Under the pieces are notes generated by a model. That model saw nothing but the letters and a program-made list of their open reading frames with translations, was not told the DNA's origin and searched no databases. Shown here one piece after another: positions 15,689 to 42,200 of a stretch of DNA of 64,000 bases. Both the position numbers and the translations under genes were made by a program. Numbering within the stretch: position 1 is the first letter of the stretch; the number at the start of each line of letters is the position of its first letter. The stretch is from Blastocystis sp. Blastoise (Eukaryota; Protista; Bigyra: Opalinata): the NCBI GenBank assembly GCA_039096225.1, contig JBBPEB010000004.1, positions 992,001 to 1,056,000 on the forward strand. The letters are read 5' to 3'.

Positions 15689-15967
15689 TTAGAAAGAGTT
15701 TATAAGAATAACTACACTCCAAGAAACAATATATATATAAGCTATCAATCCACAAAATCTTCTAAATTTTGTGTCTCCCCAATATCCAATAAATCCAAGA
15801 ACCATATTCACAATAAATTGATATAAAATCATCCAAGCAACAGCTCTATTGAAGTGTGTAATGAAAACACCAATTATTGTACCCACCCAAGGGAATATTA
15901 TATTCAATATAAATATCCATAAAGCATCACTTGTAGATAAAATTGTAGTTTCCCAAAAAGGAGCCAT
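15689..15967 (-). CDS. Small multi-pass membrane protein, Stum/SPEC3-like; intronless
   Basis: 92-aa ATG-to-TAA ORF with hydrophobic helices. IFILNIIFPWVGTII resembles the LNxxxPGxGT motif of Stum/SPEC3 proteins. Confidence 0.55.
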   Translation of the reverse strand: MAPFWETTILSTSDALWIFILNIIFPWVGTIIGVFITHFNRAVAWMILYQFIVNMVLGFIGYWGDTKFRRFCGLIAYIYIVSWSVVILINSF

Positions 15968-17362
15968 AACTAAGAGATTAATATTTATTTTTGTTTATCA
16001 AAAGATCTAAAAAAAGAAGCACGACATTGAAGAACTTGAAATAAAGATATCTAATTTCGAAGTATTAAAAAAACGTAGTGCACAAAACATCAACAAATAT
16101 TGAAATTAATGTGCAGATATCATACTCATTTCGTGTGTAGCATTGTCACAAGTATCATTCATAGAAGAACAACAATTTTTTTCGAGAACACGAAATTTGA
16201 AATATTTATTCATCCTATTTTACCTCTCAGTTTCTTCTCTATGTATAGACTAAAGCAAATATATATATTAATAGTTCATGAAGAATAAAAGATGAAAATA
16301 ATATTGAAAAACAGTGCCTTCCCGAGTGTCTGTGACACTTGCGGCGACACTTTTGTGACACTTTTTTCAGCCATGCTTAATTCGGCTGAATTCGATAAAC
16401 TGAAGCCAGATTGTGATTTCTCTCACTGATAGGTACTTTTGACTATTTAAAGCTTTTTCATGGCTTATTTTTGCATAAGAACATTTTTAATCAATAATAA
16501 TTCAATAAATAAAAGACTTGAATACAAAAGAAGAATATTTCAGGAAAGTTTTATGTAGATTAATGATTTAGACTCAAAAAAACTATTAAGCATATTTTAT
16601 CAATGAATTGACATCTTTATATTATTCTAAAGTGTTATACAATATCAAAAACGTTTCTGTTTCATTCTAAGTCGCCATTTTGACAATAATGGGGTCAATA
16701 TTTTAGAATTTTTTATAGCTCTGTTCAAAGTGAAAGACCTCTTAAATTCATAAACATGTGTAAAAGTGAATAAAATGACATCTATGAGTCAAAACGACAA
16801 CCAAGTCAAAAAGTCAAAAAATTATTTTTTTACACTGAAAGAATGAACCGAGCCTATTTGTTTGGCTGAATAAAAGACCAGAGTTTTGATTCTTTTGTAT
16901 TTACGGGAATAATTTTCTTGTCCAAAACTGAGTCTGTTTATATTTTGTTATATATCAAAGCACAAAAAGATTTTAGAATAGTTTTTACATTATATTTTAG
17001 TATAATTAAAGGTTCCGCATCAAAAACTTTTGTCAGAAGTTTAAACTAAGCAGTTATTTTTTAGTATCAAATAAAAGTCGTTTTAAAAGTTGCTATTAGA
17101 GTAATTTTATGTAATAGAAAAGCATTTGAAGTTGAAAACAGTAGTTTTTAGACGAGTATATAAACAGATCAGAAAGTCAAAGAAAATGAGTTATTTTTGA
17201 GAAGCTAAAAGTAGTGGGATACAATAGAATTGTGTAAATAATGTATTGTCTGACGCGTTAAAACTAATAATCTTAATAGAATATCTCAAAAAAAAACTGA
17301 AGAATAAAAAATGTATTTTTAAGAATATTTTTAGTATTTGACTGAAAGATTTGAATTTAAAT

Positions 17363-17911
17363 ATGAATACATTTTTATATTTAATTTGTTGTCTCTATGT
17401 AGAAATAGAACTTATTACGAGGACTATAGATGCTTTTAAGCAATCCTAATGCTGTGTAAGTATTTATTTATCTAATATATCATATTATTTTACATTATTC
17501 TTTTAGATTCCCCATTTTGGATTTCCTCTTCCTTTCAAACAGTCTCCTTGGTCTATTTCAAATACATTTATAACATGGAATCGTTGATTTGATTCTTATA
17601 AGGTATTTTATCTAATTCCTTTTTTAATTCATTTAGGTTTCTTGGTTATTATTGTCTATACCTCTTCCAAATAACAAATCAAAGCAATATTGAAGGTATA
17701 TAAATATATCTATTTGTTTCTTTATTACATTGACACATTTTCTCTTTTTTCTTTTTTTCCTATTAAAATTATTTATTTAATTTTTATTTATTTTATTTAT
17801 GTTTTATATTTATCATCAATTTATATATTATATAGAAAATTTATTTCTTATTGCCATTCTTGAATTCTGTGCTTTTGTTTGCTAGTTAAAAACGAAAATA
17901 ACAAATTTTGT

Positions 17912-17970
<59 letters not shown>

Positions 17971-20900
17971 TCATCTATCTATCTATCTATCTATCTATCT
18001 ATTAGGGCATCCAATTGATATCTCCTACAGTATCAACGATTCCTTTGACTTCTACTACTATTACTCCTTCTGAATATCCTCTCTTCTTCACGAGTACTGC
18101 AGGATCTATATATCCACTTCAATTATTCCTTAATAGTCGATGTGGACAAATACCTATAGATATTGATCTCGAAAAACGAATTAAAATCACTTTTATTAGT
18201 GATCGAAAGGGTATATTTATTATTATATATATTTATTATTATTCTATATATATATAGTTCCATCTCTTCCTACATATACCTTCTCCTATCTTTCTTCTTC
18301 TTCTCTTTATTTATATTTAAAAGCTATCTATGTAGCTATATATGATATTTATATAACAGTAGATGGTATTCCTATTCATTATTCTCCATTTTTATCTGCA
18401 TGGACAGTAACTCATGGTTCTCTTCTTCCTTCAAATACTATTTTTATACCACCAAATAGAACTACTAGTGTTGGCATTATTCGTATATATTTATTTAATT
18501 AATATTTATTTAATAATATATATATATATATAGATGATTTTGAAATATATTTTCGTGATGAATATAATAATACAGTTCCTACAACATTATTTACAGGAAC
18601 AATTCTATTAAATACAGATCAATCTTATTTCTTTACTTCAAAAGAAGGTATTTATTTATTTATTTATTTATTATTATTATTATTATATATATATAGATCC
18701 ATTACATGAAAAATTAATATATCAATTTGTTTCGTATACTTCAGAATCTGTTTATTTTAGATGGATGTATATATATATAAATATTTATATAAATAATAAT
18801 AATATTTTTATAGTGTGAATGGTTTATCTGTGATTAATACTCCATTCCAATTATCAGTATATAGTGATGTTCCTTCTTATCTCTACTCTTCTATCTCTAC
18901 TATCTATTCAATTATTCCTTTATATAGAAGTGTTGATGTATATATATAATAATAATAAAAATAAAAATAATATATATAGTTTACATTAATAGTAAGAGAT
19001 CGTTATTATAATTTAGTGAATCAGAATAATTTTATAATAAAATTATATGTAACATCTTCAGAAGGATTTGATATTCCTTTATTTCCAGGGGAATCCGATC
19101 AATTCTTTAGTTATAGAATCACTATGGATTCTACTTCACAATATACATTATCCATTCGTTTCTTTCGTGAGATTTCTAATGGTCATTTATATGTACGTCT
19201 TCTAAATCAAGAAGAAGAAGAAGATATTGATACAATTAATTCTTATATATATTGTACTATTCAAAGTAGAATTAGTCCTAATGATTGCTCGAAAACTGAA
19301 ATCTATATATCCTTTTATTAGTTATTTTATATTATATTCTCTCAATAATAATATTATATATATTTCTTAATTCTACTTTTTACAGTCCTATTAGTTTTGC
19401 AGGCACATTAACGTATATGTATATATATACAAGAGATATATATGATGATGGATATTGTTTAGATAATCGAAGAGATAAATATAAAGTGTATATTAAAGGT
19501 GATGGAGAAGTATATATATATTTATTTAATATATTATTATTATATATAGTATACTCAGAAATCCTTTTATTCATTTTCAACATCTCCTTCTCTTGATATA
19601 TATACACAAGAATATCAATATACTTCTATTTGTCCTCTTTATACATTTATTCAATTACCTTCAAAAGTTAGAAATATAACTGTGAAAATAGATTGTTTAT
19701 CTGAAGATAATATTTGGTCCTCTTTAGAATGGAATATCACTACTATACCTTCTACTGAAATGTATATTAATTATTATTATTCTCTTATATATATATAGTA
19801 CATCTACAATAAAAGTAACTCATGATTCTCTTTATACTGCTGGTGATATTATTCCTATAAACATCAAATTCTTTGATATGTAATTATTTATTATTCTTTA
19901 TTTATATATTATTTATAGATATAATAATTCAGTAATTAATTTACAAAGTGTGTATAAAATATGTGATTATAGTTATGTAGAAGGTATATTTAAATATATA
20001 TAATTTGAATATAATTTTATATAGATCGAAATACTTATTATGATGTTATGAATCCAGATTCAATAAGTCTTCTTAGTACATGTTCTATACCTGCTAAAGT
20101 ATCAGGATTCCATAAGATTTCATTGATTACATTAGTTTCTGGAAATATCTATGATTCTTATCTAAGTAAATATATTTATATTTATAATATATATTATCTA
20201 TAATAGCTGTTGTTCCTGGTACTCTTTATATTGCTCATACTGATATTCATGGTACTGGAATTGAATTTGTTTCTTATTGTGATTCTACTAATATTTCTAT
20301 TTGTGGAGATATCTATATGAATTTAAAAGTATTTATTTATTATTATTATTATTATATATTTATAATAGGATGAATATTTTAATTCATTGAATGCTACATA
20401 TTATATTGAAGAAGGTGGATATTCAAAAGAAGATCCTTCTTTTTCTATATATAATCATGAAGGAGAATATATTGATATAGATATTCGACGAGCTGATACT
20501 TTAGAAGATACTCCTTTCACTGTAGATAAACATATACTCAATAATACGTATATTTAATATTATTATTTATATTTATTATTTATTTATAGTATTCATATTC
20601 ATTATATTGTTGAAATGTCTTCTATTATTGGTCTTACTGAATCAGAATATCCTTATTTATATATACGTCTATTCTTTCAAAATAAACAAGATAATCTATT
20701 CTCTAAAGATATTCCTGTTACTCTATCTTCTCTTCCTTATTCTCTATTCATGTATATATATTTTTTATTATTATTTTCAATATCTGTATAGATTAACATC
20801 TCCTCTTAAATTTCATGTATCATCGATATTAAATGTCAATTTAGAAACTGATCCATTCTTTTTATTTCAAATATTTGATGAAAATCAACATATTATTACG

Positions 20901-22641
20901 GGTCAACAATCTAATCTTAAATGGTATTCTATTATTATTATTATATATAAATATAAATGAATATATATATATAGGATAAATATAGATGAAGATTATTATG
21001 ATGGAATCATGTATATAGTTGAAACTACATCACCTGGTACTTATAAATATCCTTTTATATATATATATATTAATAATAATTAAACACTATTATTTTCTTT
21101 AATCTATATACAACTATACCTCATCTTCCTACTGCTCGTAATTATACGTTTATATTATTATATAATAATATGCCTATATTGGATATATCAGTGACAATTA
21201 CTACATTCACATGTTTAAAGTATTCTTTATTATCAACCTATTCAGGAACATTCAGTATGGGATTTGTACCTGAAATAAGAAGAGAATTAGATGTTATTGT
21301 TAAAGATATTCATAATAATGAAATGTATATTTATTTTTATATATTATTATTTATTATTATATAGTCCTATTCCTATAAATCAACAATTCAATTTAACTTC
21401 TTCTCCTCCTCTTCTCTATTCTTATACTCTCAATAATAATCATATCCATTTTCTAATAGATTCTCCTCTTCATCTTTCTTCTTATCGAGATCTATATACT
21501 ATTACTATTTCTACATCCTTTGAAGATCAACCCTATATAGAAATACTTACTACTACTGCTTATGCTTATCCTAATTTGAATCTTCTTGGATCTCCTTCTT
21601 ATTTACTTTGTCCTGATGAATTAACTACAGGAATAGAATTCAATTGTACATTTCATCCACGAGATATTTATGGTAATGATATTAACCCTACTTATATTCA
21701 ACCATTCTTAAAATCAACATTGATTGATTCTAAGGGTAATAATCTCAATGTATGTGATTTACCTTATTGTACAGGGAATAAGCCAGCTATCTTTATTTTT
21801 GATCATAATACTATTTATACAAAGTATATATATTATAGATATTATTATTATTATTATTATATAGAATGTATTATATTGATGCTGATACATATACTATAAC
21901 ATTTTCTCTTGAACAAGTTCATTATGAACAACAATTTCAATTGATTATTTCTCCATCAATTATGGACCCTCAACAATCATTTATTCATTTCCCTTCGAAT
22001 AATAATCCTATTCCTGTTCCTAATTATGAAGATTATGGAAAAAATGGTATTTATTATTTATTTTTATTATTATTATATATATAGAATTATTAGATGATGA
22101 AGGAATTAATAAAAGTATATATTTATATTATTATAGTTATTATTTATATATATAGCTTATATAGCTGGTAATCAAATTTTCATTCATGTTCATCTCTTTG
22201 ATATATCTTTTATATTATTATTTATATATATTTTATAATATAAATATTTTTTTCTTAATAATCACTCCTTTAATAATACAATAGAAGAAGATATATCAAA
22301 AGAATTATATATAGAAATATATAAGAATGAAACTCGTATAGAAACTGATAGGTATATATATTTATATTATTATTATAATTATTATATAGTTATGCAATAT
22401 TAATTTATGGAAATGTATATGTATTTTCTTTATATCATATTATATTATATATAGATAATAAATAGATCAGTTTTATTATTAACAGTATATACAAATGATT
22501 TTATATATATTATAGGACAACAACATTTTTATATAAAGGTATGTATTTATCTATATATATATTTATTTAAATTATTCATAGTTTTATAATTAGTTTATAT
22601 AGGATAGGAAAGAGTTTCCATATATATATTATAATGATTAA
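17363..22641 (+). CDS. Filamin-type Ig-like repeat protein (cargo of the element); multi-exon, 5' and 3' ends uncertain, possibly a captured fragment or pseudogene
   Basis: Recurrent repeat motifs YFRDEYNN, IVRDRYYN, AGTLTYMYIYTRDIYDDG, AGDIIPINIKFFDIYNN, HPRDIYGN, DGIPIHYSPF and PGTYKTIPHLPTARNY in spliced exons from ~18006. The segment at ~17507-17600 has stops in all three frames. Confidence 0.65.
19307..19383 (+). other. U12-type AT-AC intron
   Basis: ATATCCTTTT donor, TTTCTTAAT branch-like site, TAC acceptor; removal joins KTEIY|SPISFAG in frame. Confidence 0.88.
21047..21111 (+). other. U12-type AT-AC intron
   Basis: ATATCCTTTT donor, TTCTTTAAT branch-like site, TAC acceptor; removal gives PGTYK|TIPHLP in frame with ORF 21170. 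Confidence 0.88.
22203..22265 (+). other. U12-type AT-AC intron
   Basis: ATATCTTTT donor, TTTCTTAAT branch-like site, CAC acceptor. The intron contains an in-frame TAA; removal restores the repeat motif HLFD|SFNN. Confidence 0.78.
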
Positions 22642-23307
22642 TTTTTTACATATTATCTATTATATTATTAAAATTGTACTATGTCATATTTAATTATAAT
22701 ATTCTTCTTGTTTGGTAGATATTTAGAATTAGTTGATTTACAGATATCTTTTCTAGTAGAGAATAATAAAATATAAATAATTCAACATTAGTTTTTTATA
22801 AAAATATAATCTTTATTATGTTAATGATAGGTTGTAAAACGTTTCAGATATTATCTATTTTATTTATATATGTATAATAATCTATAATTGATTTAAATAA
22901 GACATGTTACACAAGAAATGTTTATAAATTGTGAATCTCATCTTAATAAATAACTATACTGATTATATATTTTTATTCTGTATAAGATTTATATCTTAAG
23001 CAGAATGCTATTTTATTAATATAACTGACAAATATATTTAATTGAAATCATAGTGTGTTAAAATAGCACGGTTTTATCTCTGTAACATCTAAATATATAT
23101 GTTGTAATTAAATAATTCATGCTAAAAACTATATAATATATTTATAAATTAATTGATAATCAAATAGACTTTTTGTAAAGAAAAAGAGTAATTTTATAAT
23201 TTTATTAACCTCTGAAAACAAAGAATTTTATATAGATTCTTATAATAGTAATAATATATTGACTATTATAATTCAAAAATAAAACAATACATGTAAAAAA
23301 ATAAAAA

Positions 23308-23380
23308 TGCCCCAGATAAGATTTGAACCAGCGACAATAACCATTATAACTATAGCGCTGACCAACTATACCAACAATTC
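23308..23380 (-). pseudogene. Degenerate tRNA-like element (A box, B box, oligo-T)
   Basis: 73 nt with canonical tRNA spacing. A box TGGTATAGTTGG, B box GGTTCAAATC, followed by TTTTT. The anticodon stem pairs, but the acceptor and T stems do not. Confidence 0.65.
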
Positions 23381-23663
23381 TCTCAATTTTTTGTTTTTAT
23401 ATAATATATATAATAAATTTAAATATAGCTAAATCTTCAAATTTTTATATTCATTATCTTTCATAACATTTATGTCAGTATAGACATGCTTAGAATAACT
23501 ATTAAATAGAAATTATTAATTTTTGAAAATAAATTGTCTATTGATGTGGTGATAATGAACTCAAAAAGAACACCTCAGTGATGTAAACGTTTTTTAAATA
23601 CTAAAAATGACGCAGAGTTGATTGAATCATTATAAATAGTTGTCAAAAAAATTTAAAAGAAAA

Positions 23664-23734
23664 TGTCCCCTATAAGGATCGATCCGTCGACCATGTAAAA
23701 ATTTTATGCGCATAAACCATTCGACCAAATACCC
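23664..23734 (-). pseudogene. Second degenerate tRNA-like element, initiator-tRNA-like T arm
   Basis: A box TGGTCGAATGG, GGTCGACGGATCGATCC T-arm region, TTTT downstream. Its 3' end CTTATAGGGGACA resembles CTTATCTGGGGCA of the first copy. Confidence 0.6.
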
Positions 23735-24215
23735 CTTATATAATATTTATCATCAAGTCATATAATAATTATAAAACCAGTGACTACTAACCTTTTTTTA
23801 TTTTTCCCTTTTTAAACATAAAAATAATATATTTTACAATATAAATATTATAAATGTGTTGTGTGACTTATTCTACATGTAAAATACATTTTAAAACCAT
23901 TTTTAAAGGCTATTAAAAAACATTTTGTCTGAAGTATTGTTTTTTAAAATCTGACTTTTGTTCATACTGTTGTTTTTTGTTTGGTTTTTGAAAATAATTA
24001 TTTTAATATGCTTTTCGTTTATTTTTTTTTATTACTAGTCAGGGTGTATCTGTAGAGTCCCTACAAGACTACTTCGTGATATTTAACAAAAACAAAAACT
24101 TTTTAATTACATTATTATTTTTTATAATATTATTTTAGAGTTTATTGACAATATTATTCATTATAACACATAAATAATACTATTTGAAATAGCTTAAAAA
24201 AAGTATATAAACAAT

Positions 24216-24612
24216 TGACTATTGTCACAAAATATTTTTATTTGTCACCCAACTTAACACGAATAGTCAAACATAGGAATCATACTTGTTGTTATTTGAT
24301 GACTTATATACTTTTCAGTCATGTATCTGTCACAACATGTGTCACAAAAAATATTTTATTTGACTTATTTTCAAATAGTCATACATTATATATCAAAATA
24401 ATACGTTTTTAGTCAAAAACTGTCACGTCATAATATAATAGTCAATGAATGAATTATCTTTTTTATGTCACCCGGTCCTTTTTTCATGAAAAGTGTGTAA
24501 ATCGACGTGTCTTGATGAGCTGAGTTTGAAAATATTTTTTTTATATTTTTAAAATTAAAAACAAAAAAGTTATTTATCATTTTTCATTTTTGTGTCACAA
24601 ATTTTGCTGACA
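24216..24612. repeat. Subterminal TGTCAC/GTCA motif array
   Basis: TGTCAC at 24223, 24243, 24328, 24340, 24421, 24466 and 24593, all on one strand; 17 GTCA/TGAC cores in ~400 bp. Confidence 0.85.
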
Positions 24613-25385
24613 ATTGCGACGCCGCAAAAAAAAAGGGCCTTTTGGAAGTCGCTGTTGAAAAAAGAAAAATTTCTGTACTTTTTTATTGAAGATTTCTTGT
24701 TGTTTTTAATACATAATAGAAATAGAAATAAAAATAAAAATATTGATTAGATTCTATGTGATACTTATATTCACTTCTCATAATGATTTCAACTTGTATA
24801 ATAAAATTGTCATTTTTTTGGAATGCTTTATATTTAAAAGAATAATGTAAATAAGTCAATGAATCTCTAACTTGGAGATGAACATGATATTAGTTATTAT
24901 ATCTCTTCAAAGCATCATTATCATTTTTTCATTTCTTCAAGTTAGTTATTGTCCTTTAATTTTGTTGTTTTCTGATTAAACTACGTTGTCTAAGGTATTC
25001 GCATTCATAATCTTACATTATTAAAAAAAAAACTGAATGACATCCAAATGAACTTATAATTTCGTTTTTATTAGGTGCATACCCTGATTTGGTCTGATTC
25101 ATAAATACACGACAGTAAAACTTGAAATATAAAAAATCTGAATAATAACAATCAACAATTCATGAAAAAAACAAAAACTCACTGGTATAAAAAAAATAAT
25201 CGTGAATATAAAATAACGAAAAAGTTTTTTGTTTTAGATTTTTTTTAATACTGTATAATCAATGAAGAATAGTCTATTTATATTAGAGAAACATCTATAT
25301 TCGTTCTGTAACTAATGTCACTTCGTAATTTTTTTCATCACAATATTTTTTGGAGTTGTTCAAGTTTTACTTTCTTTTTGTTATT

Positions 25386-26573: not shown

Positions 26574-29500
26574 ATTTATTATGTATTATATATATAGTTC
26601 TATGAACGATTTGGTTTTAATTCGAAATAACTCGAAACCTATTGTTAATACTATTACTTGTTCGTATATATATATATATATATATATATAAAGAGTTATA
26701 TATTTCTTTTTTATAATAATAATATATATATATAATTTATTTATGTTTTTAGATCTTTTTCAACAGTAGATATGAAACGTAAGTTATTTATTGATTCTAT
26801 TATTCCTGACACGTGGGTTCATTGTACTCTGTACAAACCAAGCTATAGCTTTGATAACAACGTTCTCCCCACTAGAAGTATATATATATATATATCAAAA
26901 ATAAACTTTTTTAATTATCTTCTTTTTATATAATAATAATATATATATAGGTAATGGCTGTCTTTTCTCTAGTTTCTTTAAAGTATCTACTCAGAATAAT
27001 CAACATGAACAAAACTCCTCTCTCAATTCAACGGTTGAACCTTCTAATAATCGCGACAAATTATTAAAGTATATATATATATATGTAGTAATTATTATTA
27101 TGATCTTTTTCCTTAAATTGTTCATATAATTATATATATATAGTATTTATAAAGATAATGAATTCAATTTCAGTGTCCAAAAGAGAATTGTATGATATGT
27201 ATAATATATCTATATATAATATACTATATAGAATAATCCTATTATGATTTATGATGGTGTTAATCGTAATCGCCTCAGTGTTCCTACTCCTTTAACATTA
27301 TCCTTTTCATCCTTTATTAATTCTATTACTGTATATATTTATTATATTTATTATATTTATTATATTTATTATATTTATTATTATAATATTTATAATATTT
27401 ATTCTTCTTACACTTTCATATGTATTTGGTTATATAAATTTAATTATATTTTTTAAATATATATGTATATAATAATATTATTAACTATAATACTTATATA
27501 GTCTGTCATACCACATAATACGTTCCCTCTTTTATTTGTGGACAATTTACTATTAAGTACTTCTAGTTTCATGAGAATATATACTGGATCAATACCAAGA
27601 GATATTGGACTTTATAATGTATATATTATTATATATTATTATATATTATTATATATATTATTATATATTATTATATATATTATTATATATATTATTATAT
27701 ATTATTATATATATTATTATATATATTATTATATATTATTATATATTATTATATATTATTATTATATATATTATTATTATATATTATTATATATATTATT
27801 AATATTTGCCTTTTATATAGATTCCTATTTTTGACTGCTCTCAAATTGCGGGTATTGTTCCAAGTATATATATATATAATAAAATAAAAATAATAATAAT
27901 ATATAATTTATATATAGGTATTAAGCAATCATTATATTTTAATTATATCCGTTTGGATGGTATATATAATAATAATAATAATAATATTAATACAATAATA
28001 ACTAAATAAATATTAAATAAAACTACTTATATATATAGTTACATATTCTCCGTCTGCTTTTGGTGATATCACTAAATTCTTAAATAACTCCTTATATAAT
28101 ACTGCTGATAACTTAGTATTTACAAGTATGTAGTCGGAATATGTTTACTTATATTGATCCTATTATATATATATATATATAGTTTATATTGATACTATTA
28201 ATCTAATATATATATAGAATCGTCATCAATTATTGTGAAATATGATTATTATTCAACTAATAATAAACTTGTATTAAGAAAAGTTAGTCTTCCTTGTATA
28301 TATATATATATATTCTATACATAACAATATTCACTATATATATATATAGTGATGTTATTTGATACGGAGGGTATTACCCAATTCTTTAAAGGTCATTTTT
28401 ATGGGTTTACTAGGCTTTCTGTTCTTGAGATTGAAACTATAAATCAAAATAATGCTTATAGAGATTATATAATATATTTATATGGACGATATATATATAA
28501 CCGTTGTCCTAATTTAAAAATTATATATAATAAATCTGAAATTCAAAATTTGTCTCTTCTTTCTCATCAAATAACACGAGAAACACCATCTATTCAATTA
28601 TATATATCTGATTATGATTCTATAATTAACGATGAATCTATTGTCTTATCTACAGTTTCTCTTCCTATTGCTCCAAAACCTATTAGCTATGCTTCTTATA
28701 AACCTTGTATATTTGTACAAAATGTAAAGTCGATGGTTCCTGAGTGTCATGTTTTTAATACTTTATCTTTATATAAAATTGATGAAAATGTATATATAAA
28801 TAATACTTTATCTTCTTATGATAAATGTAAATTAGCTATTGAATATCCATCTATTTCTACTGCTTTTCTTTATGGATTACAGAATATACTTTCTTCACAA
28901 TATTTTGGTTTTATTGAAACTATTAATAGTTCTAGTATATCTAAGAATTATTATTATTTACCTATGATTTCTACTCAACAAGATCTTAATTATATTAATC
29001 AACCTTTATATACATATTGTATTTGTCCTCCAGATTTACCTACTGATTATTCATTATTAAATGATAATGCTAAACTTCCTACTTATAAAAATCAATGTAT
29101 AACTATAAATACCGAAAATAAAGGTCGTTTCTTATGTCGTGGTGATTATTTAATTGTTCATTCTTTTCAACCTCAATTAGTCTATACTATAGCTAATATT
29201 CAATATACTATATTACCTTATATGACTGTTTATCCTCGTCAATCACTTCCTTTTATGGTTGAAACATCTGAAACTAAACAAAGAATGAATATTATACGTG
29301 ATTGTATATCACATAATTATCCATTATTATTAACAGGTAAAACTGCTAGTGGAAAAACATTTTCTGTTGATATGGTATGTATACAAGGAGAAGTACCTAT
29401 TATACGTTTTAATTTCTCTCCTTCTTCTACTATTGAAGAATTAAACGGTGATATATCTATACATACAATTAATGGTAAAAGTGTATTCTTTTTTAAAGAA

Positions 29501-32500
29501 GGTCCTTTTACAGATGCTTTTGTTAATGGTAAATTATTATTATTAGATGAAATGTCTTTATGTTCTCCTACTGTTATTAAAGCTATTATGATTGCTATTG
29601 AATCTAAACAATTATATTTAGATAAAATAGATTCTTATTGTTTATTACCTATACATGAACAATTTCGTATTATTGCTACACAAAATCCTGCAGGAAGTGA
29701 TTATAAACGTCAACCATTATTAGAATCTATTTTAGATCATTTCCGTAGTTTATCTAATATAGGTGAAACATCTTCTATTGAGGATCCTTATCAACAAGAA
29801 CGTAGTATTATTCAACATCGTAATTTACTTAAATCAAGTGATATTGATTATATTATTAATCAACATTATGCACAAAATATGAATATACAAAAGAAATTAA
29901 AGACAAAATGTTATACTATTCGTGATATAAATCGTATACTTTCTCTTTATCTTTATAGTAAAGTATCTTTAAAGGATTCTTGTTCACTTATTTATTCATA
30001 TAATTCAGATTTTACAAAGATAAAATCAATTCCTAAAGAAATATCTTCTTTATCTATTCAATATCCTTTTGAAAAACTACAAGAAAAACCATGGTTATCT
30101 TTTTGTTATCGACTTGAAATGTTATTAAGAAGTGGTAGTAATATTATTATATATAGTGATGAAGAATATATAGCACGTAAATATTTATATGCTTATCTTT
30201 ATTTCTTAATGAAATTAAAGAAATATTCTTCTCCTGATCAATTATATAAGACTTTTTATTGTAGTAAAGGAATAGAAGCTGAACAATTAATAGGATCTAT
30301 GATATTACAAAAAGGAATATTACATAATGGTAAAGAAGGATTATTACCTAAATTTGCTATTTCTGAATTAATTCAATGTGCTCAACAAGGTTTATTATGT
30401 ATATTTGAAAATCTTGGTTATATGGATAGTAATTCTTTTGAAAGATTAAATCCTATATTAGAAAAACAAGTAAGTAATGAATTAAATTCTAAAAAATATA
30501 ATACTAATTTATTTGATACTATAAATAATAATAATGTTATTTCTTGTGAACGAAATGATTGTATTGTTCGTTTTGATGAATTAGGTGAGAATTGTGATGT
30601 TTTAATAGAACCTTCTTTTAGAGTTCTTGGCACATGCTCTAAAGAAGAATTAAATAATTTCTCTCCTGCTCTTCATAATCGTTTTGTTCTTTTAGAAATA
30701 AAAGAAGAAAAAGAAGATAAACACTCTATTACTTCTTCTTCTATGGAGATTGAAGAAGATATTTCTACAAAGAAATTATCATTACCTAAAAGTAAATATG
30801 AAGAAAATCCTAAGATTTCTGATGATAATAAAGATAGTTATTTTTCTTTATATCATAATAAAACTTTATTTTATAAAGGTCAACAAATTTGTTATACTGA
30901 TTTACTTTCTCAATATTATAATAATGATTTATATCCTCTTTATTATTTTGATAAACTTAATATATTAAAAGGAATTGATATGATAAATAAGATGAATATG
31001 ACTAATACTATGGAAAAAGATCAATTTATTACAGAATTTATATATCATTATAAAGAATATAAACAAAATTCATCATTAACTTCAAATATAGTTTATTCTT
31101 TATTTAATAAAGAAGCTGCAAATCGTAAATATTTATATACTTCTATTGTTAATGAATTATTATGTAATCGTTGTATATCTTTATATGGTGAGAAATCAAA
31201 TGGTAAAAGTACTGTATTAAATATATTATTAAATACTTTAGGTATAGAGAATCATAGTCGTATAGTATATTTAACTTCTGAAACAGATATTAATGTATTA
31301 TTAGGTTCTTATTCACTTTCTTCAGGTACACAAAATAATGCTACTTTCTTAGAAGGTTCTTTGTTATCTGCTATGAGAAATGGTGATGTTTTTATATTAG
31401 AAGATGCACAAAATATATCTATAGAATTAAAACAATCATTAGAACAATTTATTGATCCTTTTTGTAATCAATTTATATATAAAGAACAACATTATGTTAT
31501 TCATCCTTCATTTAGACTTTTATTTATATATACAAATCGTGAATCTTCTAATCATATAGGATTATTACCTTCTTTTATTCCTGATATATATATACCTTCA
31601 TTAACTATAGATGATTTAAAATCAATATTAAATTATAAATTATTATTTTATTTTTATGATTTACATATACCCTTACGTTTATTATGTATTATACAAACAA
31701 TATATAATAATATTAAAGATTTATTCCATATAAAGAAATCAAAAATACAACAAATATTTAATGATAATTCTATTAATATAGATAGAGATTCTATTTTCTT
31801 ACTCTATATATATTTCCATTTTATTCATCCTTCTCTAATTAATAGTAATGAAGAATTATTTAAAAATATATGTTGTTGTTTTTATCATCTATGTATATCA
31901 TCTGAAAAGAATTCTATAAATGATTTAATATCTTCTTTTAATTTAAATGAACTTCGTAATTCTACTACTATTCATATAGAAGATTTATATATATCTATGA
32001 AAAATTTAATTACTAATTTTATTAATAATACTATTCTATATGATGAAGCTAAACATACGTTAGCTACAGAATATATTACATTACCTATATTAGATACTTT
32101 AGGACCTTTACCTAAGTCTGAAAAGAAATATCAATGGTTTTTAAAAGTTTTATTTAAATATTGTTTATTACAAACATATAATCAAGGAATTTCTATAGAT
32201 TCTCGTGATTATTTAAGAATCCCTATATTATTATGTGGTTCTTCTTCTAAATATAAGTTTATTGATTATATATATAAGAATAGTATAGAAAAAATTGAAT
32301 TGAGTCGTAGTATAACAAGTGATTATTTATTAGGAAATGATATAGTTAAGAAACCGAATGAAATTCAAGAATTATTAAAATCCTTTAAAGATCCTTCAAC
32401 ATTGATATCTATGAATGAATCCAATAATAAGAATATATATACTATTTCTAGTCATTATTCTGCTTATCAACAATGGTATACAATGATTAAGACATTAGAA

Positions 32501-33239
32501 ACAAGTAAAGAGAAGTCTATTATGTTTTATAAACCTGGTCACTTATCTAGATTATTATATTTAGAGAAAAATATATTATTAGATCATTATGAATTATTAA
32601 ATGATGAAATAAAACCAAGAATAAAAGAATTATTATCAGATATATATATAAAGAATTCTTATAATTTATATGAAAATAATGATAGTAATAGTAATCTTAT
32701 TGATATACAAAATATTAATTTAATATTATGTGTTGAATCTGAAGATTATAAACAATTAACTCTTGATGATTATTCTATACTTATATGCTGTGATGATTAT
32801 TCAAAAGAAGAAAAATCTTCATTATTTCCATCTATTCCTTCTTCTTCTTCTATATTAGATTTATCTTATCATACATTACGTGTAGTAGAAGGTACTCAAT
32901 TTTTATTTAAAAATGGTTATGAAGATGCTCTTTATTATTATTTATTTATGTCTTCTGAACAAAATAATCGTAGACGTATATATAAGTATTATAAGCATAG
33001 TACTGTTTTAGATGATTTAATACCAGTAAATCCTGCAAAATATTCATCAGAGCATGATGTTTCATTTAATATGGATATATTAAAAAATATATTTAATGAT
33101 ATGTTTTATAATACTTTTATTTCTTTTATAAATAATGATCAGAAATCAGCAACTCCACTTGTTATTTCTCGTACTACTATACAAATACTTATATCTATAT
33201 TCTTAAGTTATTTTGGAGAATATAAACAATTTGATCAAG

Positions 33240-33275
<36 letters not shown>

Positions 33276-36200
33276 TATTCAATATTGTTCATTTTCCTGT
33301 TATTCTTGAAGGTTTACCAGGTGTAGGAAAAAGTGATTTAGCTAGAAAAGTTTTTGAATATTTAAATATTACATTTTTACCTTTTAATTTTAGTCAAAGT
33401 CAAGAAATATCTACTGTATTTGGTACAACTAGTTTTACTAGTGAATCTATTAAATTTAAACCTACAAAATTATCTTTATTATTAGATCCTTCATTATATA
33501 CAAATGATTCTGTTATTATAGAAAAAGATAGTTTATTAAAAAGGTCTAGTTCATTACATAGAACAAATAGTTTGACTACAAGATATAATATAGATTCACA
33601 AGATTTAGATATCAATATAAATTCACAGGAATCATTAGTAAATAATACATTCAAAACATTATCTTCTTCCTCTTTAATAGATAATGAAATACATTCATCA
33701 TCTTCAATAGGTTCTGTTACTAGTTCTAGTTATAATATTAATAAGAATCGTACAATTGGTCTTATTTTTGATGAAATGAATTTAGCAACACCAGAATTAT
33801 TAGATGAATTAGCTATTTTAATTCATTCTCTTTCTGAAAATACTAGTTATAGAATTCCTGGTCGTGATGAAAAGATACAATTACCTCGTATTATATGTAT
33901 AATTACTCAAAATCCTGCTTCTATGTCTACTTCTCGTGGTTTATTACCTCACTCTATTACAAAATTAGGATTATATCATAGAGAAATTGCATTTGATATA
34001 TATGAAATGATACATATTAGTTCTTCAATTATATTACCTATATATAAACAAAGTATACAAAATAAATTAAATAATAATAATAATCAAATAGGGCAATCTT
34101 CTATGTTGAGTAGTAATAAGAATAAGAAAAGAACACTTACTATAAAGAGAAATACAAAGAAAACGAAATCTTTATCTAATAATAATGATAATAATAATAA
34201 TGATAATACTAATAATAATGAAATAAAAGTATTTAAAGAAATGTTCCATAATATGATCGTAACTGCTATACAAGTAGGAGAAGAAACATCTATTCCTTTT
34301 ACTCTTCGTGATACATATAAAGCTAAATCTATTATAGAAAATGGAAATACATCTGTTGAAGTAGCTTTATGGTTAGCTATAGCTTCAAAATATCCTTCAA
34401 GTCGTCGTGAAGCATTAAATCAATTATTACATCTTGATGAGAATAGTGTTATTAGTATTAATTATAATCAAGAAAAACATAGATTAACTTTTGAAAGTCA
34501 TTTTAATACTTATTTAGATCATGTTAATTTTAATAGTGATTATATATCATTAACAGATCAAGAGAAATTCTTATTATATCAATTAGTATTTTCTTATCAA
34601 AGTGGTCGTTCTGTATTATTATATGGTCCTTCACCATCAGGAAAAAGTTATGTTATTACTCAATTATCTAAATTATTAAATAGAAAATATGTTACTATTC
34701 CTATTAATTCAGATAGTGATATTTCTATTTTAATTGGTAAGAATATTATTAATCAAGAAGCTACTCTTCAAAATGATAATGATAATAATAGTAATAATAA
34801 TATAATTGATACTATTCAAACTTCAACAAAAAATACTTCACCATCTTTTGCATCTTTTTTAGCTAATAATAATAATGATAATAATAATAATATAGATATA
34901 GATATTGATTCTGATTCCTCTTCTTCTTCTTCTTCTATTTCTTTATCTGAAGCTACAATACCAATAAATAAACAAGTTACTAAAACAAATCAAAGTTTAA
35001 CAAAATTCCGTTATGGACCCCTTTTAGAAGCCATGAAAAATGGTTATATTGTTATTATTGATGGTATTGATCAAGCTAAAGGAGATATTTTAGAATTATT
35101 AAATCCATTATGTGAAGAAAAACCAAAATTATCTATTCCTGAGATTGGTATTACTTTTGTTTATGGAAAACCAAGACATTCTAATGAAGTTCAAATACAT
35201 GAAAATTTCCGTTTATTTATGACTGCTACAAGTACAGTTTTAACATGTATTCCATTACCTTTACAAAGTCGTTGTATTATTCTTTCTACAACTTCATTAT
35301 CGAATTATAAAAATGTTTGTAATTTTTGTGATTTACCTTGTAATTATAAAAATCCTATTGGTAAATATATTAATAACGATATTCCTCGTACTTATAATTT
35401 CCGTACAATTAATCGTATTATATCAACTCATGATATAAATATTAATAATTATTCTGAATTAGAATTTAATACTATGATTACTGAATGTCAACGAGATCGT
35501 AATATGATTAATAAATCACAACGTTTTGTTGATATCTTTTTAAGCCATTTAAATGATTATTCATTATATATTAATGCTTTATCTTCTTCAAAGAATACAT
35601 ATTCTAATAATTTATTTTATTTATCAGAAATTATGCCGTCAAATGCTGATGCTACTTCTGAAGATGAATTATTATTATTAGAAAAAACGATTGTTGAAGA
35701 TATTTATAAATGTTTAAATCAATCAATATCTTCATTTACAAATAGTGAAATTAATAAATTTTCAAATAATATAAAATCATTATCTCAATCTATTTCATAT
35801 TATCCATTAACTATTCTTTTAGAATTATTAAAGAATTATAATGATGAAAATATATCTTTCTTAGGAAAAGAAGAAGAAAATAATGATTTATATTTAACAA
35901 ATTGGTCATTATTTTATAATTATTTATTCCAAAATAAGCATAAAAGTTTATCAACTGATTCATCACCTTATGATCAAGACGGTTATCAAATATTTATATT
36001 AGATACACCAGAAAAAGAATTTATTTTCTGTTATATATCATGTGATCAAGAATTATTTGAAGAACATAATTCTGATATTATGCCCTATTTTAATGATTTA
36101 ATACAATTATTATTTGATCGTATTTCTAGTTTTAAAGATATAAATAATAATAAATGTTTAGAAGTTATTCAGACATTTAGTGATTTAGTTATACGTTATC

Positions 36201-39200
36201 GTGATATGGAAAAGAGTTTAAGTATTATTCAATCAGGTGCTGTTGATAAACAAAGTTATCAAGCTAATATTAATGATCATTATGTTCATAACAATGATAA
36301 TGCTAATAAATTATTATCTTATTTTAATTATGATAGATTTATTCGTGAAGCTGTAAAGAAGATAACTGAAAGAGTTACTATTATAGAGAATGAAAGTCAA
36401 GATAAAGAAGATCAAGCCAATTCTACTATGTTAAATATAGATGATACAATAGCCATTAGTTCTACTATTAAACATACTATTAAACAATCTAAATTATTAA
36501 GAAATAAAAATAATAAGAAATATTTAGATGAAATTATTCGTAATAATTATGATATTTTAAATACAAATATATTAACAGATAGTACTAATAATTTAGATTA
36601 TATACATTTATCATATTGTTTATATTTATATAAATATAAGAATAATGTATATGGTTTCTTTGATGAGAAAGTAATTGATATAATAGAGTCAATGAGTATA
36701 TCTATTAATAAAATAGATTTAAATAATAAAGAATTATTAAATAATTTATGTATTTTATTAGAATATTCTATGAATATTAGTATAGAAAATAATCATAATA
36801 AATTATTATTTAATGATGATAATTTATTACATATTATTCAAACATATAATTTTTATATACATCGATTAATATCTTTACAAGATTTAGATAATAGTATACA
36901 TTATTTTATAAATAATAAATTATTTGATGAATCTATGATAGAACAAGTTATAGAGAAACGTCATTTAGATAAGAATAGTATACAATTATATTATTATTTA
37001 TGTCATTTCCCACTTCAATATTTATCTATATATCATTCTGTATGTTTTTATCCATCAATTCAAGATTTTTGTAATTCTGTAATAAATTATGAAAAAGATT
37101 TTAATAATTCTATTGAATTAACTATTGAATCTTCAAGAAAATATAAGAATTTACAACGTACAGATCGTTCATCTATATATACAATGAATCAATGTTTAAC
37201 TAAAGAAATAATTAATAATAATGCTATTGATATTGATATTGATAATAAAGATATTGATAAGAATATGCAATGTGTTTTTATACCTGGAAGTACATTAAAG
37301 ACTCAAGATATAGAATTTTGTGTTCGAATAATTGATATTGATCGTTATAATGATAGTATATCCAATATAAATATAAATAATAATAATGATAAGATTATTA
37401 ATATTAATCCACAAACTAATTTATATAAAGATATATATGTAATAAGTGATTTAGAACGTTTTATTATACAAGCTCCTTATTTATGTTTATTTGATAAATT
37501 ATCAATTATATCTCCTTATTTCTTTACTGATGAAAGTATTATTATTCGTGATATATTAAATACCAAACGTTGGACTGATTATATTGAAGAAGTATTAAGT
37601 TTAAGTAAATCATTTAATGATATATATACGAATATGAAATTATTAGAAGAGAAACATATGGAGAATCAATTAGAAGAAAAGAATAATAATATTCAACATA
37701 AAATAGATTCTATTAATGGTATAACTAAAAAAATGGCTTTATTAAAAGAAAACTATTTTAAAAAACTTAATAATTATATAGAACTAGTGAATGAAAAGAT
37801 TAAATATAATAATAATTTATATAAATCAAATGAAGAATTAATGTCTTTACGTACTATTTATATAAATATATATTCAACTTATTTATATCATTTTAGTTGG
37901 AATAGTTTAATGGATAATTCTATTGTTCAATTATATAATAGATTAACTAAAGAACAATTACAATCTGCTTATAAATTATTATTAAATTTTAATAATAAAT
38001 ATTATAGTATAACAGAACCTGTGAAGAGTTCATTTATGGAAGTTGCCTTTATTCCATATATGGAAAATGAATCTTATTTAACTTATACATTTGATTTATA
38101 TTATAAGAATACAAATATATTAGCACCTATACAAATGAATTTAATTCATGAAGAAAAAGATAATAATAAAGATATTGATATGGATAATAGTAATGATATT
38201 GATATAGATAATAATAAAGAAGATAGTCAATATATGATGAATAATGATTCACAAGAAATATTACCTTCTAGTTTATTAAATAATAATAGTGATAAGAATG
38301 ATGATAATAATGATAATAAGAATGATAATAATAATAATACTACTTATACAAATCATTCTATTGGTATATGTCGTTCTACTCCTATGAAATCTAAATTTGG
38401 TGTTCAATATCATATTATACCTATGCCTTCTTCTACTTATGATGTTCGTATACGTATATTAAATCGTTATTATAAAGATGAACAAGAAAATAAAGAGAAT
38501 TTTAATAATTCTGATTCTTATCCTTTCTCTATACGTTATCGTTATGTACAAATACCAGAAAATTATAATCATACTTCACTTGAAAATGAATGTATATTAT
38601 TACTTAATTTATTATTACAATTAAGTACTGATTTCTATGCAAAAAATACACAATTTAGATATGATTTAAGTTATTTTGATAAATCATTTAATACTGTATG
38701 TCAACCTATATCTATAAAATCAAATAAAGAAATGATTATTGAAAATGATATTAATAATAATTCTACAATAAAACGACCTTGTTTAGATATTCATTTATTT
38801 AATCAAATAGAAAAATATATATCTAAACAAGATATTAAATATAGATATACAAATGATTATACTGATTATTTACCTTTATATAAATATATTAATCCTAGAA
38901 TAGATGATATGTATCATATAGAAATACCTTCATTATTATTTTTAAGTCATTATTTTAATTCTAATGGTGTTTGTTCATTATATTTAATACCTAAGAATAT
39001 AACTATAGATATAAATGAATTTAATAATATAAATAGTGAAGAAGTATTATCTATTAAGAATTATCATTATTTTGATATCATTAATATATTAAACTATATA
39101 CCTGTTAAAGATGAATTATCTACCCTTGAATATGGTAAGCAAGAAGGATATGTTTTTACAGATAAAGAAAGAATAGAAGTTACTCAAATTAATAAATTAT

Positions 39201-42200
39201 GTAATGATTATATGAAATATTATGAAGAACGTGAAGTTAAATCTAAAGAATTAGATGTATTAAAGAAAGAATTAGAAACAATTAAAGAATTATCAATAGA
39301 AAAATCATTATTTGTGAATACAAATTTAATTGAAAATACTATAGAATTAAGTGGTCAATATAATTTTGATGAAAATAATAAACAGTCAAATATTAATGAT
39401 CCTGATATAGATATTGATCAATATAATATGAATAATAATATTATTAATAATTCAAAATTAACAAATATATTATACGATTGTATTGTTATATGTAAACAAA
39501 ATTCTATACCTTGTATCTTAACACCAATGTATAATAATCTTCCTTGTATTTATTTACCTGATAAATTAGATAGTTATCATGATAGTGATCTATATATACC
39601 TTTAATTAATCCATATAATTATCCTATACGTTTATATTGTGATACTTGTGATGTGACACTTTTAGATAAAGGTATTCATATACATATTACAAGTGATAAT
39701 AATAATAATATACATAATATACATAAACATATACTTGAAATATCTTGTGAAATGTCTACTATATTAGTATCTTTAATTTATAAAGAAAATAATTCAAATG
39801 AAATTATTAAAACTGGTATTGATATTGGTATATTTAATGATAATAATCAGCGTTTATTATATATACCTTCAAAAGAAGTATCTATTTATTATAAACAAAA
39901 GAATAAAACTTATAAACAAAATAATAAAGGTAATGCTGTATATTTTGAAGATACAGGATATATATTATTCTTTAATCAACAACCAAATCAATTATATAAA
40001 TTCTTTATATTTAATGATAATGGACATATTGAACCTTATATACAAAATATATATGAAAATGAAATTATTATTCAAAATAATATGTTTAATGAAGAACAAT
40101 TATGGAATAATTTCAAACAAGCAAAAACATTTATAGAATATTTTATTGCTTTAAAAGAATTGAAATTTACATTATTTACAAATACTATATATCATCAATA
40201 TACAGAATCTTTATATAATTATATATTAGAGTATAAATCTATGTTTTTACCTTCCGTAATTGATTTTATACAAGATATATTTTTAATTAATGATACATCA
40301 AATTCTTCTTCTAATAATACAAATACTACTTCAAATAATAATAGTATATCTACAAAATATCGATTATTCTGGACAGATAAAATAAGAAAAGAAAGTGTTG
40401 GTGTTATTAATAATTTTATGGTACAAGATAAATCAAATAATAATAATAAATTTGGTAGTCATTATAAATTAACAAAACGAGTTGAATCTGTAGAACAAGT
40501 TGATGATATAATGAAAAATAAAGAAAATGATACCAAGTTAGTCTATATGAATAAAGGTGATACAATTGATGATAGTATCAGTGCTACTGTTAAAGAGAAA
40601 GCAAAAGCATTTATAGTACAAACAATTATAGATGATGTTGATATTAGTGAATTAAATAATGAAAAGAATGAAGAGAAAGATAAAGAATTAGAAAATAGAT
40701 TAGTAGAAAATACAACTACAATTGGTTCAAATCAAGTTTATAGACAATATTGTAATATGTCTTTAGATGATTATGTTAGTGAATGTTTAGTTAATAATAA
40801 AGATTCTTTAAGTGCTGGTATATTAAAGACAGATACTATTATAGATATACATAAAGATGAAGAAAAGAATAATTATATGAATTCTGAAAATCGTAGAAAA
40901 GAATTAAAATATATTACTATATTAAAACCTATTATATCTCATTGGACAAATGAAATACGTAGTTCTGTTAAAAATAATCAATATCAATATAGAAAACGTA
41001 TTGTTTTAGTTATAGATACAAATTTCACACATAAAGAAAAGAAAGCACAATTCCGTACACTTCTTGGTACTATTATTATATTATTATGTAAAGAATTAGA
41101 TATACCGTTAGCTTTATGTTGTACAACTACTAGAAATCAAGGATTTATTATATGTACTGAAAATGATGATGAAAAATATAAGATAAGTTTATTAAATAGT
41201 TTATCAAAATTAAAGAAAGCATTATCTAGTCCCTTAGATTTATTTGAAACTGTTCAATTTAAGAATTATTTAGAAGATGATAATGGATTTATATTTATTT
41301 CTGATTGTTTTTCTTCTCAATTATTAACAGATATTGAAGGTGTACGTAAATATATTTCAGATCGTATTAATAATATATTATTATTACAAATAGTAAATGA
41401 TACTAGATCTTATCCTAAAGATGAATGTATTTCTAATGAAAATCAACAAAAAATAAATGAATTACTTTTAAAGAATTTTAATGATCATTGTATACCTATG
41501 ACAAATTCATGTTTATTTGTAAGTCCTATACCTTTATTTATAGATTTCTTCTATTCTAAAGAACCATTAACTGCTTTACAACAAAAACAAGTGAAAGTAG
41601 TTGTTAGTAAACCTCAATTTAATGCTGTAACTAATTTAATTGATTCTTTTGATTTAGATGTAGATCATTTAGTTACTAAAGATTATGTTGTTTCTGTTGG
41701 AGAATTAGATCAAAATATTGAAAAGATTAATAATTTACCTTCTATTACAAATGAAGATATGAATACTTATAATATTTATAATGTTACAACTAATTTTGTA
41801 TCTTTAGTAAATAGTAAGATTCATTCTAATGATTTATTTGAATCTTTAAATATGTTATTCCCACCTAACAAACCTACTAAATATATACCTTCAACAACAG
41901 GTAATATTATTAATTTTAAAGAATTTATAAATTATATTATAAGTGGTATTTCAAATGGTAAATTATTTAAAAAGAAATCAGGTAATAAAGTTCGTGATTA
42001 TTCAGTAAGTATTGTTATTGATTGTACTACAAATACTTTTTCTAATGTCAATAGAAGTCATAGTTTATTTACTTTATTAAGATTACTTAAAGGTATTGAA
42101 ACTTTAGAATTACAAAATATTGATATTTGGGTATGTAGAAATCAACCTATTAAGATTGCTACTGGTATTTCATCAGATACTGTTTTATCGAATAATATTA

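What the first reader, a model, noticed from the sequence alone, without database searches (positions are those of the whole stretch)
16304..24662. 8.3-kb Pack-type hAT-like transposon that has captured an intron-containing host gene
Seen: TTGAAAAA immediately precedes CAGTGCCTTCC (16312) and immediately follows GGAAGTCGCTG (24654). The two ends also share TTGCGGCG at an identical offset, which is unlikely by chance in such AT-rich DNA. Motif arrays lie on the inner side of both ends. Between the non-coding arms is a ~5.3-kb multi-intron Ig-repeat gene and no transposase. Established: an 8-bp TSD, short YARNG-initiated TIRs and subterminal repeats typify the hAT superfamily; gene-capturing Pack elements are best known in plants. 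Inference: a non-autonomous element that mobilises genomic (unspliced) gene fragments, a possible route for expanding and shuffling surface-protein families in this protist.
Basis: partly seen in the sequence, partly recalled or inferred. Interest (0 to 1): 0.9.

Follow-up and report, generated by a model that had tools for sequence, protein, structure and literature searches.

The report
Gene-carrying hAT transposon shedding cargo introns
In a tortoise-gut Blastocystis, a recently multiplied cut-and-paste transposon carries a 4.4-kb middle slice of a giant surface-protein gene, and its otherwise identical copies differ by cleanly missing introns, which would be intron loss caught in the act if raw DNA reads confirm it.

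Summary
Confirmed as a real mobile element. The genome is Blastocystis sp. Rus-B/Blastoise. Window 16312-24654 has six copies, each with its own perfect 8-bp target duplication. Sister elements of 19-31 kb with related ends encode a hAT transposase, and ~190-bp MITEs share the ends. Corrections: the cargo is the same in all six copies and is not a whole gene; it is an internal 4.4-kb slice (codons ~710-1785, no start, signal peptide or anchor) of a >4,500-codon subtelomeric surface-protein family. The hAT ends are wrapped round a truncated Pack-CACTA element. New observation: three fully compared copies show zero substitutions over 8.3 kb yet differ by exact loss of whole introns, one of them AT-AC type, in a nested pattern. 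Other repeat families and host paralogues show the same. This needs a spliced-RNA template: biological conversion (~70%) or an assembly artefact (~25%); I obtained no read evidence. Pack-hATs are known in plants and frogs, so this is a new variant. The scan had noted sister elements on other contigs; the intron losses were not found in its notes.

The parts
16304..16311 (.). left 8-bp target-site duplication
16312..16423 (+). hAT left end: 11-bp TIR (16312-16322) plus subterminal hexamer repeats; 74-76 of 92 columns identical to left ends of transposase-carrying sisters
16424..18005 (+). left arm of a CACTA-type Pack family (starts with the CACT-purine terminus; ~75% identical to >30 loci); holds short non-coding exons and ends in a microsatellite intron whose acceptor opens the cargo
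18006..22435 (+). cargo: internal slice of a giant subtelomeric surface-protein gene; 23 exons in this copy, one stop-free frame of ~1,140 codons, first Met near codon 295, breaks off inside an exon
19307..19383 (+). AT-AC (minor-spliceosome type) intron
21047..21111 (+). AT-AC intron; exactly absent from the C13:1163042 copy
21365..21823 (+). fused exon: three introns (after 21449, 21579, 21720) exactly absent here but present in the C8 host paralogue and, in varying subsets, in sister copies
22203..22265 (+). third AT-AC intron (5' site one base off consensus)
22436..22544 (.). AT-rich filler of unknown origin
   Evidence: sequence only
22545..23271 (+). right arm of the CACTA-type Pack family (~70% identical to >30 loci), cut short before its terminus
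23295..24654 (+). hAT right arm with subterminal repeats and 11-bp TIR (24644-24654); last 70 bp identical at 69-70 positions to the C15 and C28 transposase-carrying elements
24655..24662 (.). right 8-bp target-site duplication

Best explanation
A young non-autonomous hAT element built in layers. (1, inferred) A CACTA-type Pack element took up a middle slice of a subtelomeric surface-protein gene at the DNA level, joining it inside an intron of its own arm. (2, inferred from anatomy) It lost its right terminus and came to lie between hAT ends, 112 bp on the left and 1.36 kb on the right. (3, shown by six TSD-bounded copies; enzyme inferred) A hAT transposase supplied in trans, most likely from the C15/C28 elements whose right tip is the same, moved the 8.3-kb unit repeatedly and very recently. 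(4, pattern shown, mechanism inferred) During or after this amplification, copies were patched from a spliced RNA or cDNA template, probably the element's own transcript, so that whole introns vanished exactly while no point mutation accumulated. The cargo is most likely raw material or a truncated transcript, not a working surface protein. Confidence is ~0.95 for step 3, ~0.8 for steps 1-2, ~0.7 for step 4.
For: Six paired copies with distinct perfect TSDs; related empty site with one target copy. Five sister elements of 19.0-31.2 kb with TSDs contain the transposase; hAT dimerisation domain E=5e-4, DUF4371 E=5e-9 in a paralogue. 14 of 15 MITEs with the same ends have TSDs. CACTA-type arms pair genome-wide, three pairs tested show 3-bp duplications, cargo differs among them. 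Nine host loci match the cargo at 91-96% with sharp edges. Zero substitutions among three full copies; all nine sequence-checked large indels among element copies are exact introns; states are nested across five copies; five more exact losses in other repeat pairs; 20 reverse-transcriptase ORFs in the genome; the family is present in RNA runs.
Against: All copies come from one assembly. Pfam hAT-domain scores for the partner transposase are just under the curated cut-off, the structure model was unusable and no solved hAT structure matched. The left end is only ~80% identical to the proposed donors. Host paralogues also show intron-sized gaps, so step 4 is not special to the element. Which locus is the RNA template is not shown.
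Confidence: 0.75

Rival explanations
1. The transposon is real, but the exact intron losses are an assembly artefact: RNA-derived reads entered a polishing step and removed introns patchily.
For: [quoted passage not shown] Losses occur in several expressed repeat families and host paralogues. The implied rate is extreme.
Against: Methods list nanopore racon rounds and Illumina DNA Polypolish rounds, no RNA step. From my own knowledge of these tools (not tested here), Polypolish drops alignments with large indels and POLCA ignores reads that map equally to identical repeats. The pattern is nested like a descent tree, and most introns of the same expressed gene are kept in all copies.
Confidence: 0.2
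2. Introns were removed by DNA-only deletion (slippage or end joining between AT-rich intron ends) during gap repair after excision, with no RNA template.
For: The introns begin and end in TA-rich runs; microsatellite length changes do occur among copies.
Against: Nine of nine deletions restore exact exon junctions, including an AT-AC intron with different ends; slippage between TA runs would leave remnants; rough chance per deletion 4e-4.
Confidence: 0.04
3. Single-copy gene with promoter modules and a coincidental 8-bp repeat, or segmental duplications.
For: The window is AT-rich and the 8-mer occurs 9 times on the plus strand.
Against: Six copies end exactly at the TIRs with unrelated flanks and different duplications.
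Confidence: 0.01

Closest known systems
Pack-TYPE transposons of plants, including Pack-hAT and Pack-CACTA (PMC8903248, PMC6379663)
   Same: Non-autonomous, short TIRs and TSD, host coding fragments with a recognisable parent, several copies per family.
   Different: Protist host; cargo of 4.4 kb with 25 intron positions, against mostly 1-2 kb for rice Pack-MULEs (PMC6431247); ends of one superfamily wrapped round a Pack element of another; transposase-bearing sisters up to 31 kb also carry cargo; copies differ by exact intron loss.
Animal Pack-TIRs, e.g. multicopy Pack-hAT-N8_XT in frog and Ssk-FB4 in Drosophila (PMC8277862)
   Same: Capture followed by repeated transposition with distinct TSDs; chimeric exon-intron structure.
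   Different: The frog hAT case carries 291 bp of UTR and multicopy cases are rare (4 of the reference set); here several young multicopy families coexist with intact-looking transposases.
ToxhAT (14-kb cargo-carrying fungal hAT; abstract of PMC12506042)
   Same: Large hAT unit moving non-transposon coding DNA.
   Different: ToxhAT carries a whole functional gene; this element carries a fragment without start or anchor.
[quoted passage not shown]
   Same: Exact loss, runs of adjacent introns, and in the five identical copies all six lost introns lie in the 3' part of the cargo.
   Different: Usually inferred between species; here it appears between copies with no substitutions. The C26 copy lost 5' introns, against a strict 3' bias.

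Membership tests
hAT superfamily | 8-bp target-site duplication | tested here: met
   6 of 6 copies, 5 large sisters, 14 of 15 MITEs
hAT superfamily | short imperfect TIRs starting pyrimidine-A-purine-N-G (consensus from my own knowledge) | tested here: met
   11-bp ends, 9 of 11 matching; pattern gives 118 genomic hits against 14 for the control
hAT superfamily | asymmetric subterminal repeats (PMC10368747) | tested here: met
hAT superfamily | transposase with hAT dimerisation domain and DDE core between related ends | tested here: met
   in sister elements, not in this one; PF05699 E=5e-4 (below cut-off), DUF4371 E=5e-9 in a paralogue, catalytic D, D, CxxH and E motifs seen by eye
hAT superfamily | that this transposase excises these ends | not testable with these tools
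   inferred from the shared right tip
hAT subgroup (Tip, Ac or Buster) | placement in a transposase tree | tested here: inconclusive
   only Blastocystis homologues were found; weak alignment to the Buster-like enzyme, E=0.07; Tip-like by resemblance only
Pack-TYPE element | no transposase, host gene fragment inside, parent elsewhere | tested here: met
Pack-TYPE element | capture at DNA level (introns kept) | tested here: met
   22 of 25 intron positions kept here, all 25 in the C20 copy by span
CACTA/EnSpm (inner element) | CACT-purine termini with 3-bp duplication | tested here: inconclusive
   met in three sibling pairs; the inner copy keeps only its left terminus
CACTA/EnSpm (inner element) | a CACTA transposase acting on these ends | tested here: inconclusive
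   four PF02992 ORFs exist in the genome; their ends were not read
Processed retrocopy | all introns lost, poly(A) tail | tested here: not met
   most introns are kept and the ends are TIRs
Minor (U12-type) AT-AC introns | AT-AC ends with 5' consensus and branch-point motif; removal keeps the frame | tested here: met
   Blastocystis is rich in this subtype (PMC10639083)
Filamin/Ig-like repeat protein (cargo) | profile match to an Ig-like or filamin domain | tested here: inconclusive
   no Pfam hit exon by exon; a short recurring motif fits filamin-type repeats; parent has a split Fibro_Slime match, E=1e-3 and 0.03

The most novel reading that the evidence does not exclude
In this Blastocystis lineage, transposon-borne gene fragments are converted by spliced RNA faster than they gain point mutations, so that a cut-and-paste element progressively turns genomic cargo into partly processed cargo; nested hAT and CACTA Pack elements thus form a gene-shuffling system in which RNA-templated intron loss can be watched and measured between identical copies.
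Probability: 0.55. Interest if true: 0.9.

Novelty: new variant of a known kind. Interest (0 to 1): 0.74.

Why it matters
Pack elements are described mainly from plants and a few animals; my paper searches found none for Blastocystis, and the genome paper reports only bulk repeat fractions. Here they are young, multi-kilobase, nested across superfamilies and paired with intact-looking transposases. The intron losses matter more: the mechanism of intron loss is still debated (PMC3652778), and human Blastocystis have streamlined genomes for reasons left open in PMC12129017. Identical copies at unique addresses that differ only by whole introns would let rate, tract length and template of loss be measured directly in a culturable organism. 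If it is an artefact, it flags a problem in a public assembly.

Tried and rejected
The 16.2-kb Buster-like hAT (about 19 copies) first looked like the autonomous partner; rejected because its own ends differ and it only holds a nested, truncated relative of this family. A 48-kb pairing on C10 was rejected, no TIR at the left hit. The 13-kb CACTA 'pairs' on C8 and C28 were rejected, one end is a 97-bp MITE. My first GT-AG-only gene model gave a false stop; AT-AC introns resolve it. Selection on the cargo: pS 2.3% and pN 0.6% against the C8 paralogue cannot be assigned to the cargo, since the true donor paralogue is unknown. tRNA-like units in the right arm: no ARAGORN or Rfam hit. Exon search of 1.8 billion representatives gave one short unnamed relative and one coiled-coil false hit. 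AlphaFold model of the transposase had pLDDT 35, so no fold search was run.
Full report
Observation. No long ORF lies inside.

Genome. The assembly has 33.34 Mb in 34 contigs. Protein hits are labelled Blastocystis sp. Blastoise with contig lengths equal to C29, C15, C24 and C18; this is the tortoise strain Rus-B (PMC12129017 Table 1; PMC10690189).

It is mobile. Both arms occur at 99-100% identity in six paired places (C13 twice, C17, C20, C23, C26), each bounded by a different perfect 8-bp duplication. The flanks of the C23 copy join into a related locus that holds the target once. Five copies are 8.27-8.47 kb; the C26 copy is 16.9 kb because of three inserts of another 2.86-kb repeat. Window, C13b and C17 copies, compared end to end, have no substitutions; C20 and C23 have none in about 4.9 kb of ends and score 100% in the interior tiles outside one intron-variable stretch. 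The amplification is very recent.

The family and its enzyme. A TIR pattern gives 118 hits against 14 for the control. They include 180-193-bp MITEs (14 of 15 read have 8-bp duplications) and five large elements of 19.0, 21.7, 23.6, 27.7 and 31.2 kb, all with perfect duplications. Each large one contains a member of one transposase family. The C15 and C28 enzymes are identical over the region searched, are annotated as 1,327 and 1,421 aa, carry a hAT dimerisation domain at E=5e-4, and a paralogue has DUF4371 at E=5e-9. Their last 70 bp match the window element at 69-70 positions and their left ends at about 80%, so they are the likeliest source of transposase. This is inference. The C15 element also carries cargo, an intron-containing piece of UTP20.

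The inside is a second transposon. From 16424 the sequence matches more than 30 loci at about 75%, which begin at a CACT-purine terminus and continue after about 1.55 kb into different host exons. Window 22545-23271 matches a partner arm found 5.6-24 kb downstream of those termini. Three sibling pairs tested have 3-bp duplications, and four CACTA transposase ORFs exist. In the window the right arm stops before its terminus. So hAT ends enclose a crippled Pack-CACTA. In five of ten sibling arms a start codon sits directly before a splice donor at the end of the arm; the window arm's last exon has none.

The cargo. Window 18003-22435 matches nine loci at 91-96%, all within about 110 kb of contig ends. 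The one read in full (C8) starts with a signal-peptide-like N-terminus, has a split Fibro_Slime match, repeats resembling filamin-type Ig domains, long Cys-rich tracts, one transmembrane segment near residue 4,100, and exceeds 4,500 codons in a local model. The cargo covers about codons 710-1785. It starts at a splice acceptor in phase 0 and ends inside an exon. With three AT-AC introns allowed, its 23 exons form one stop-free frame of about 1,140 codons whose first Met is near codon 295. It cannot encode an anchored or secreted protein on its own. Two RNA data sets, one an independent poly(A) gut metatranscriptome, hold the family's sequence, but I could not tell cargo from parent transcripts.

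Exact intron loss. The window's exon 21365-21823 is four exons in the C8 parent; three GT-AG introns are exactly missing. The same stretch spans 421, 461, 503, 503 and 548 bp in the five near-identical copies. Full alignments show that C13b lacks 20924-20974 and the AT-AC intron 21047-21111 but keeps the 21449 intron, and C17 lacks 21824-21864 but keeps two. The C26 copy lacks three other adjacent introns. All nine deletions checked at sequence level are exact. For the five copies the states nest: C20 has all introns; C23 lacks one; C17, C13b and the window each lack that one plus others, which needs at least five events against no substitution (95% upper bound 1.8e-4 per site). Host paralogues show intron-sized deficits by span, and five more exact losses appear in other repeat pairs, some inside the CACTA arm and one between two copies of the 16.2-kb element with no mismatch. 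Exact removal of both intron types needs a spliced template. Flanking exons show no paralogue alleles, which favours the element's own RNA, though a closer paralogue is not excluded. The genome holds 20 reverse-transcriptase ORFs over the Pfam cut-off. Whether loss is tied to repair of excision gaps is a guess.

Artefact risk. Everything rests on one assembly. Its methods list DNA polishing only, but one sentence and one step are ambiguous.

Comparison and verdict. It works like, and meets the tested features of, a Pack-type non-autonomous hAT. Such elements are known in plants (PMC8903248) and frogs (PMC8277862), so the class is not new. The protist setting, size, nesting of two superfamilies and above all the intron-by-intron processing of cargo make it a new variant. 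First-stage notes of this scan had recorded sister elements on other contigs and the AT-AC introns; a word search for the intron losses found nothing. Interest 0.74; about 0.55 if the losses prove artefactual, 0.9 if confirmed.

Noticed in passing
G000:C33:553467-569685 (L056, L057) and about 18 more copies: 16.2-kb Buster-like hAT with an 873-codon transposase frame, its own TIRs and 8-bp duplication, carrying a nested truncated family-A element with an intron-containing UTP20 fragment; copies are nearly identical.
   Followed up: partly
G000:C26:591314-608195, C34:594288-626887, C15:446104-472326: CACTA-type elements of 16.9, 32.6 and 26.2 kb with 3-bp duplications; contents not read.
   Followed up: partly
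L093 (G000:C23:633500-641300): Mosaic: part of a CACTA arm, then a UTP20-like fragment, a ~550-bp trinucleotide run, then the 3' part of the same surface-protein gene; the join again lies in a microsatellite intron.
   Followed up: partly
P0001, P0004, P0009, P0010 N-terminal 140 aa: The family-A transposases have an N-terminal extension that by eye resembles an ERCC4/Mus81-type nuclease motif; Pfam gave no hit.
   Followed up: partly
G000:C15:142940-163633: 20.7-kb stretch bounded by two identical right-type ends whose outer flanks are reverse complements: an inverted duplication rather than an insertion.
   Followed up: no
L020, L028, L033 and C26 inserts (L061, L062): Two repeats with hairpin 3' ends, Helitron-like; one 2.86-kb unit sits three times in the C26 copy of the element.
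   Followed up: no
window 28349-44566: 16.2-kb uninterrupted ORF with several AAA_5 domains in an otherwise intron-dense genome; would fit 3'-biased intron loss, untested.
   Followed up: no
window 15689-15967 and about 25400 onward: The element sits between two divergent genes, about 345 bp from a 92-aa membrane-protein ORF (no Pfam hit); it may affect a shared promoter.
   Followed up: no
window 23308-23734: Two tRNA-like stretches with box A/B resemblance in the hAT right arm, minus strand; no ARAGORN or Rfam support.
   Followed up: partly
L044:51-920: Tc1/mariner-like transposase ORF beside a hAT gene on C28.
   Followed up: no
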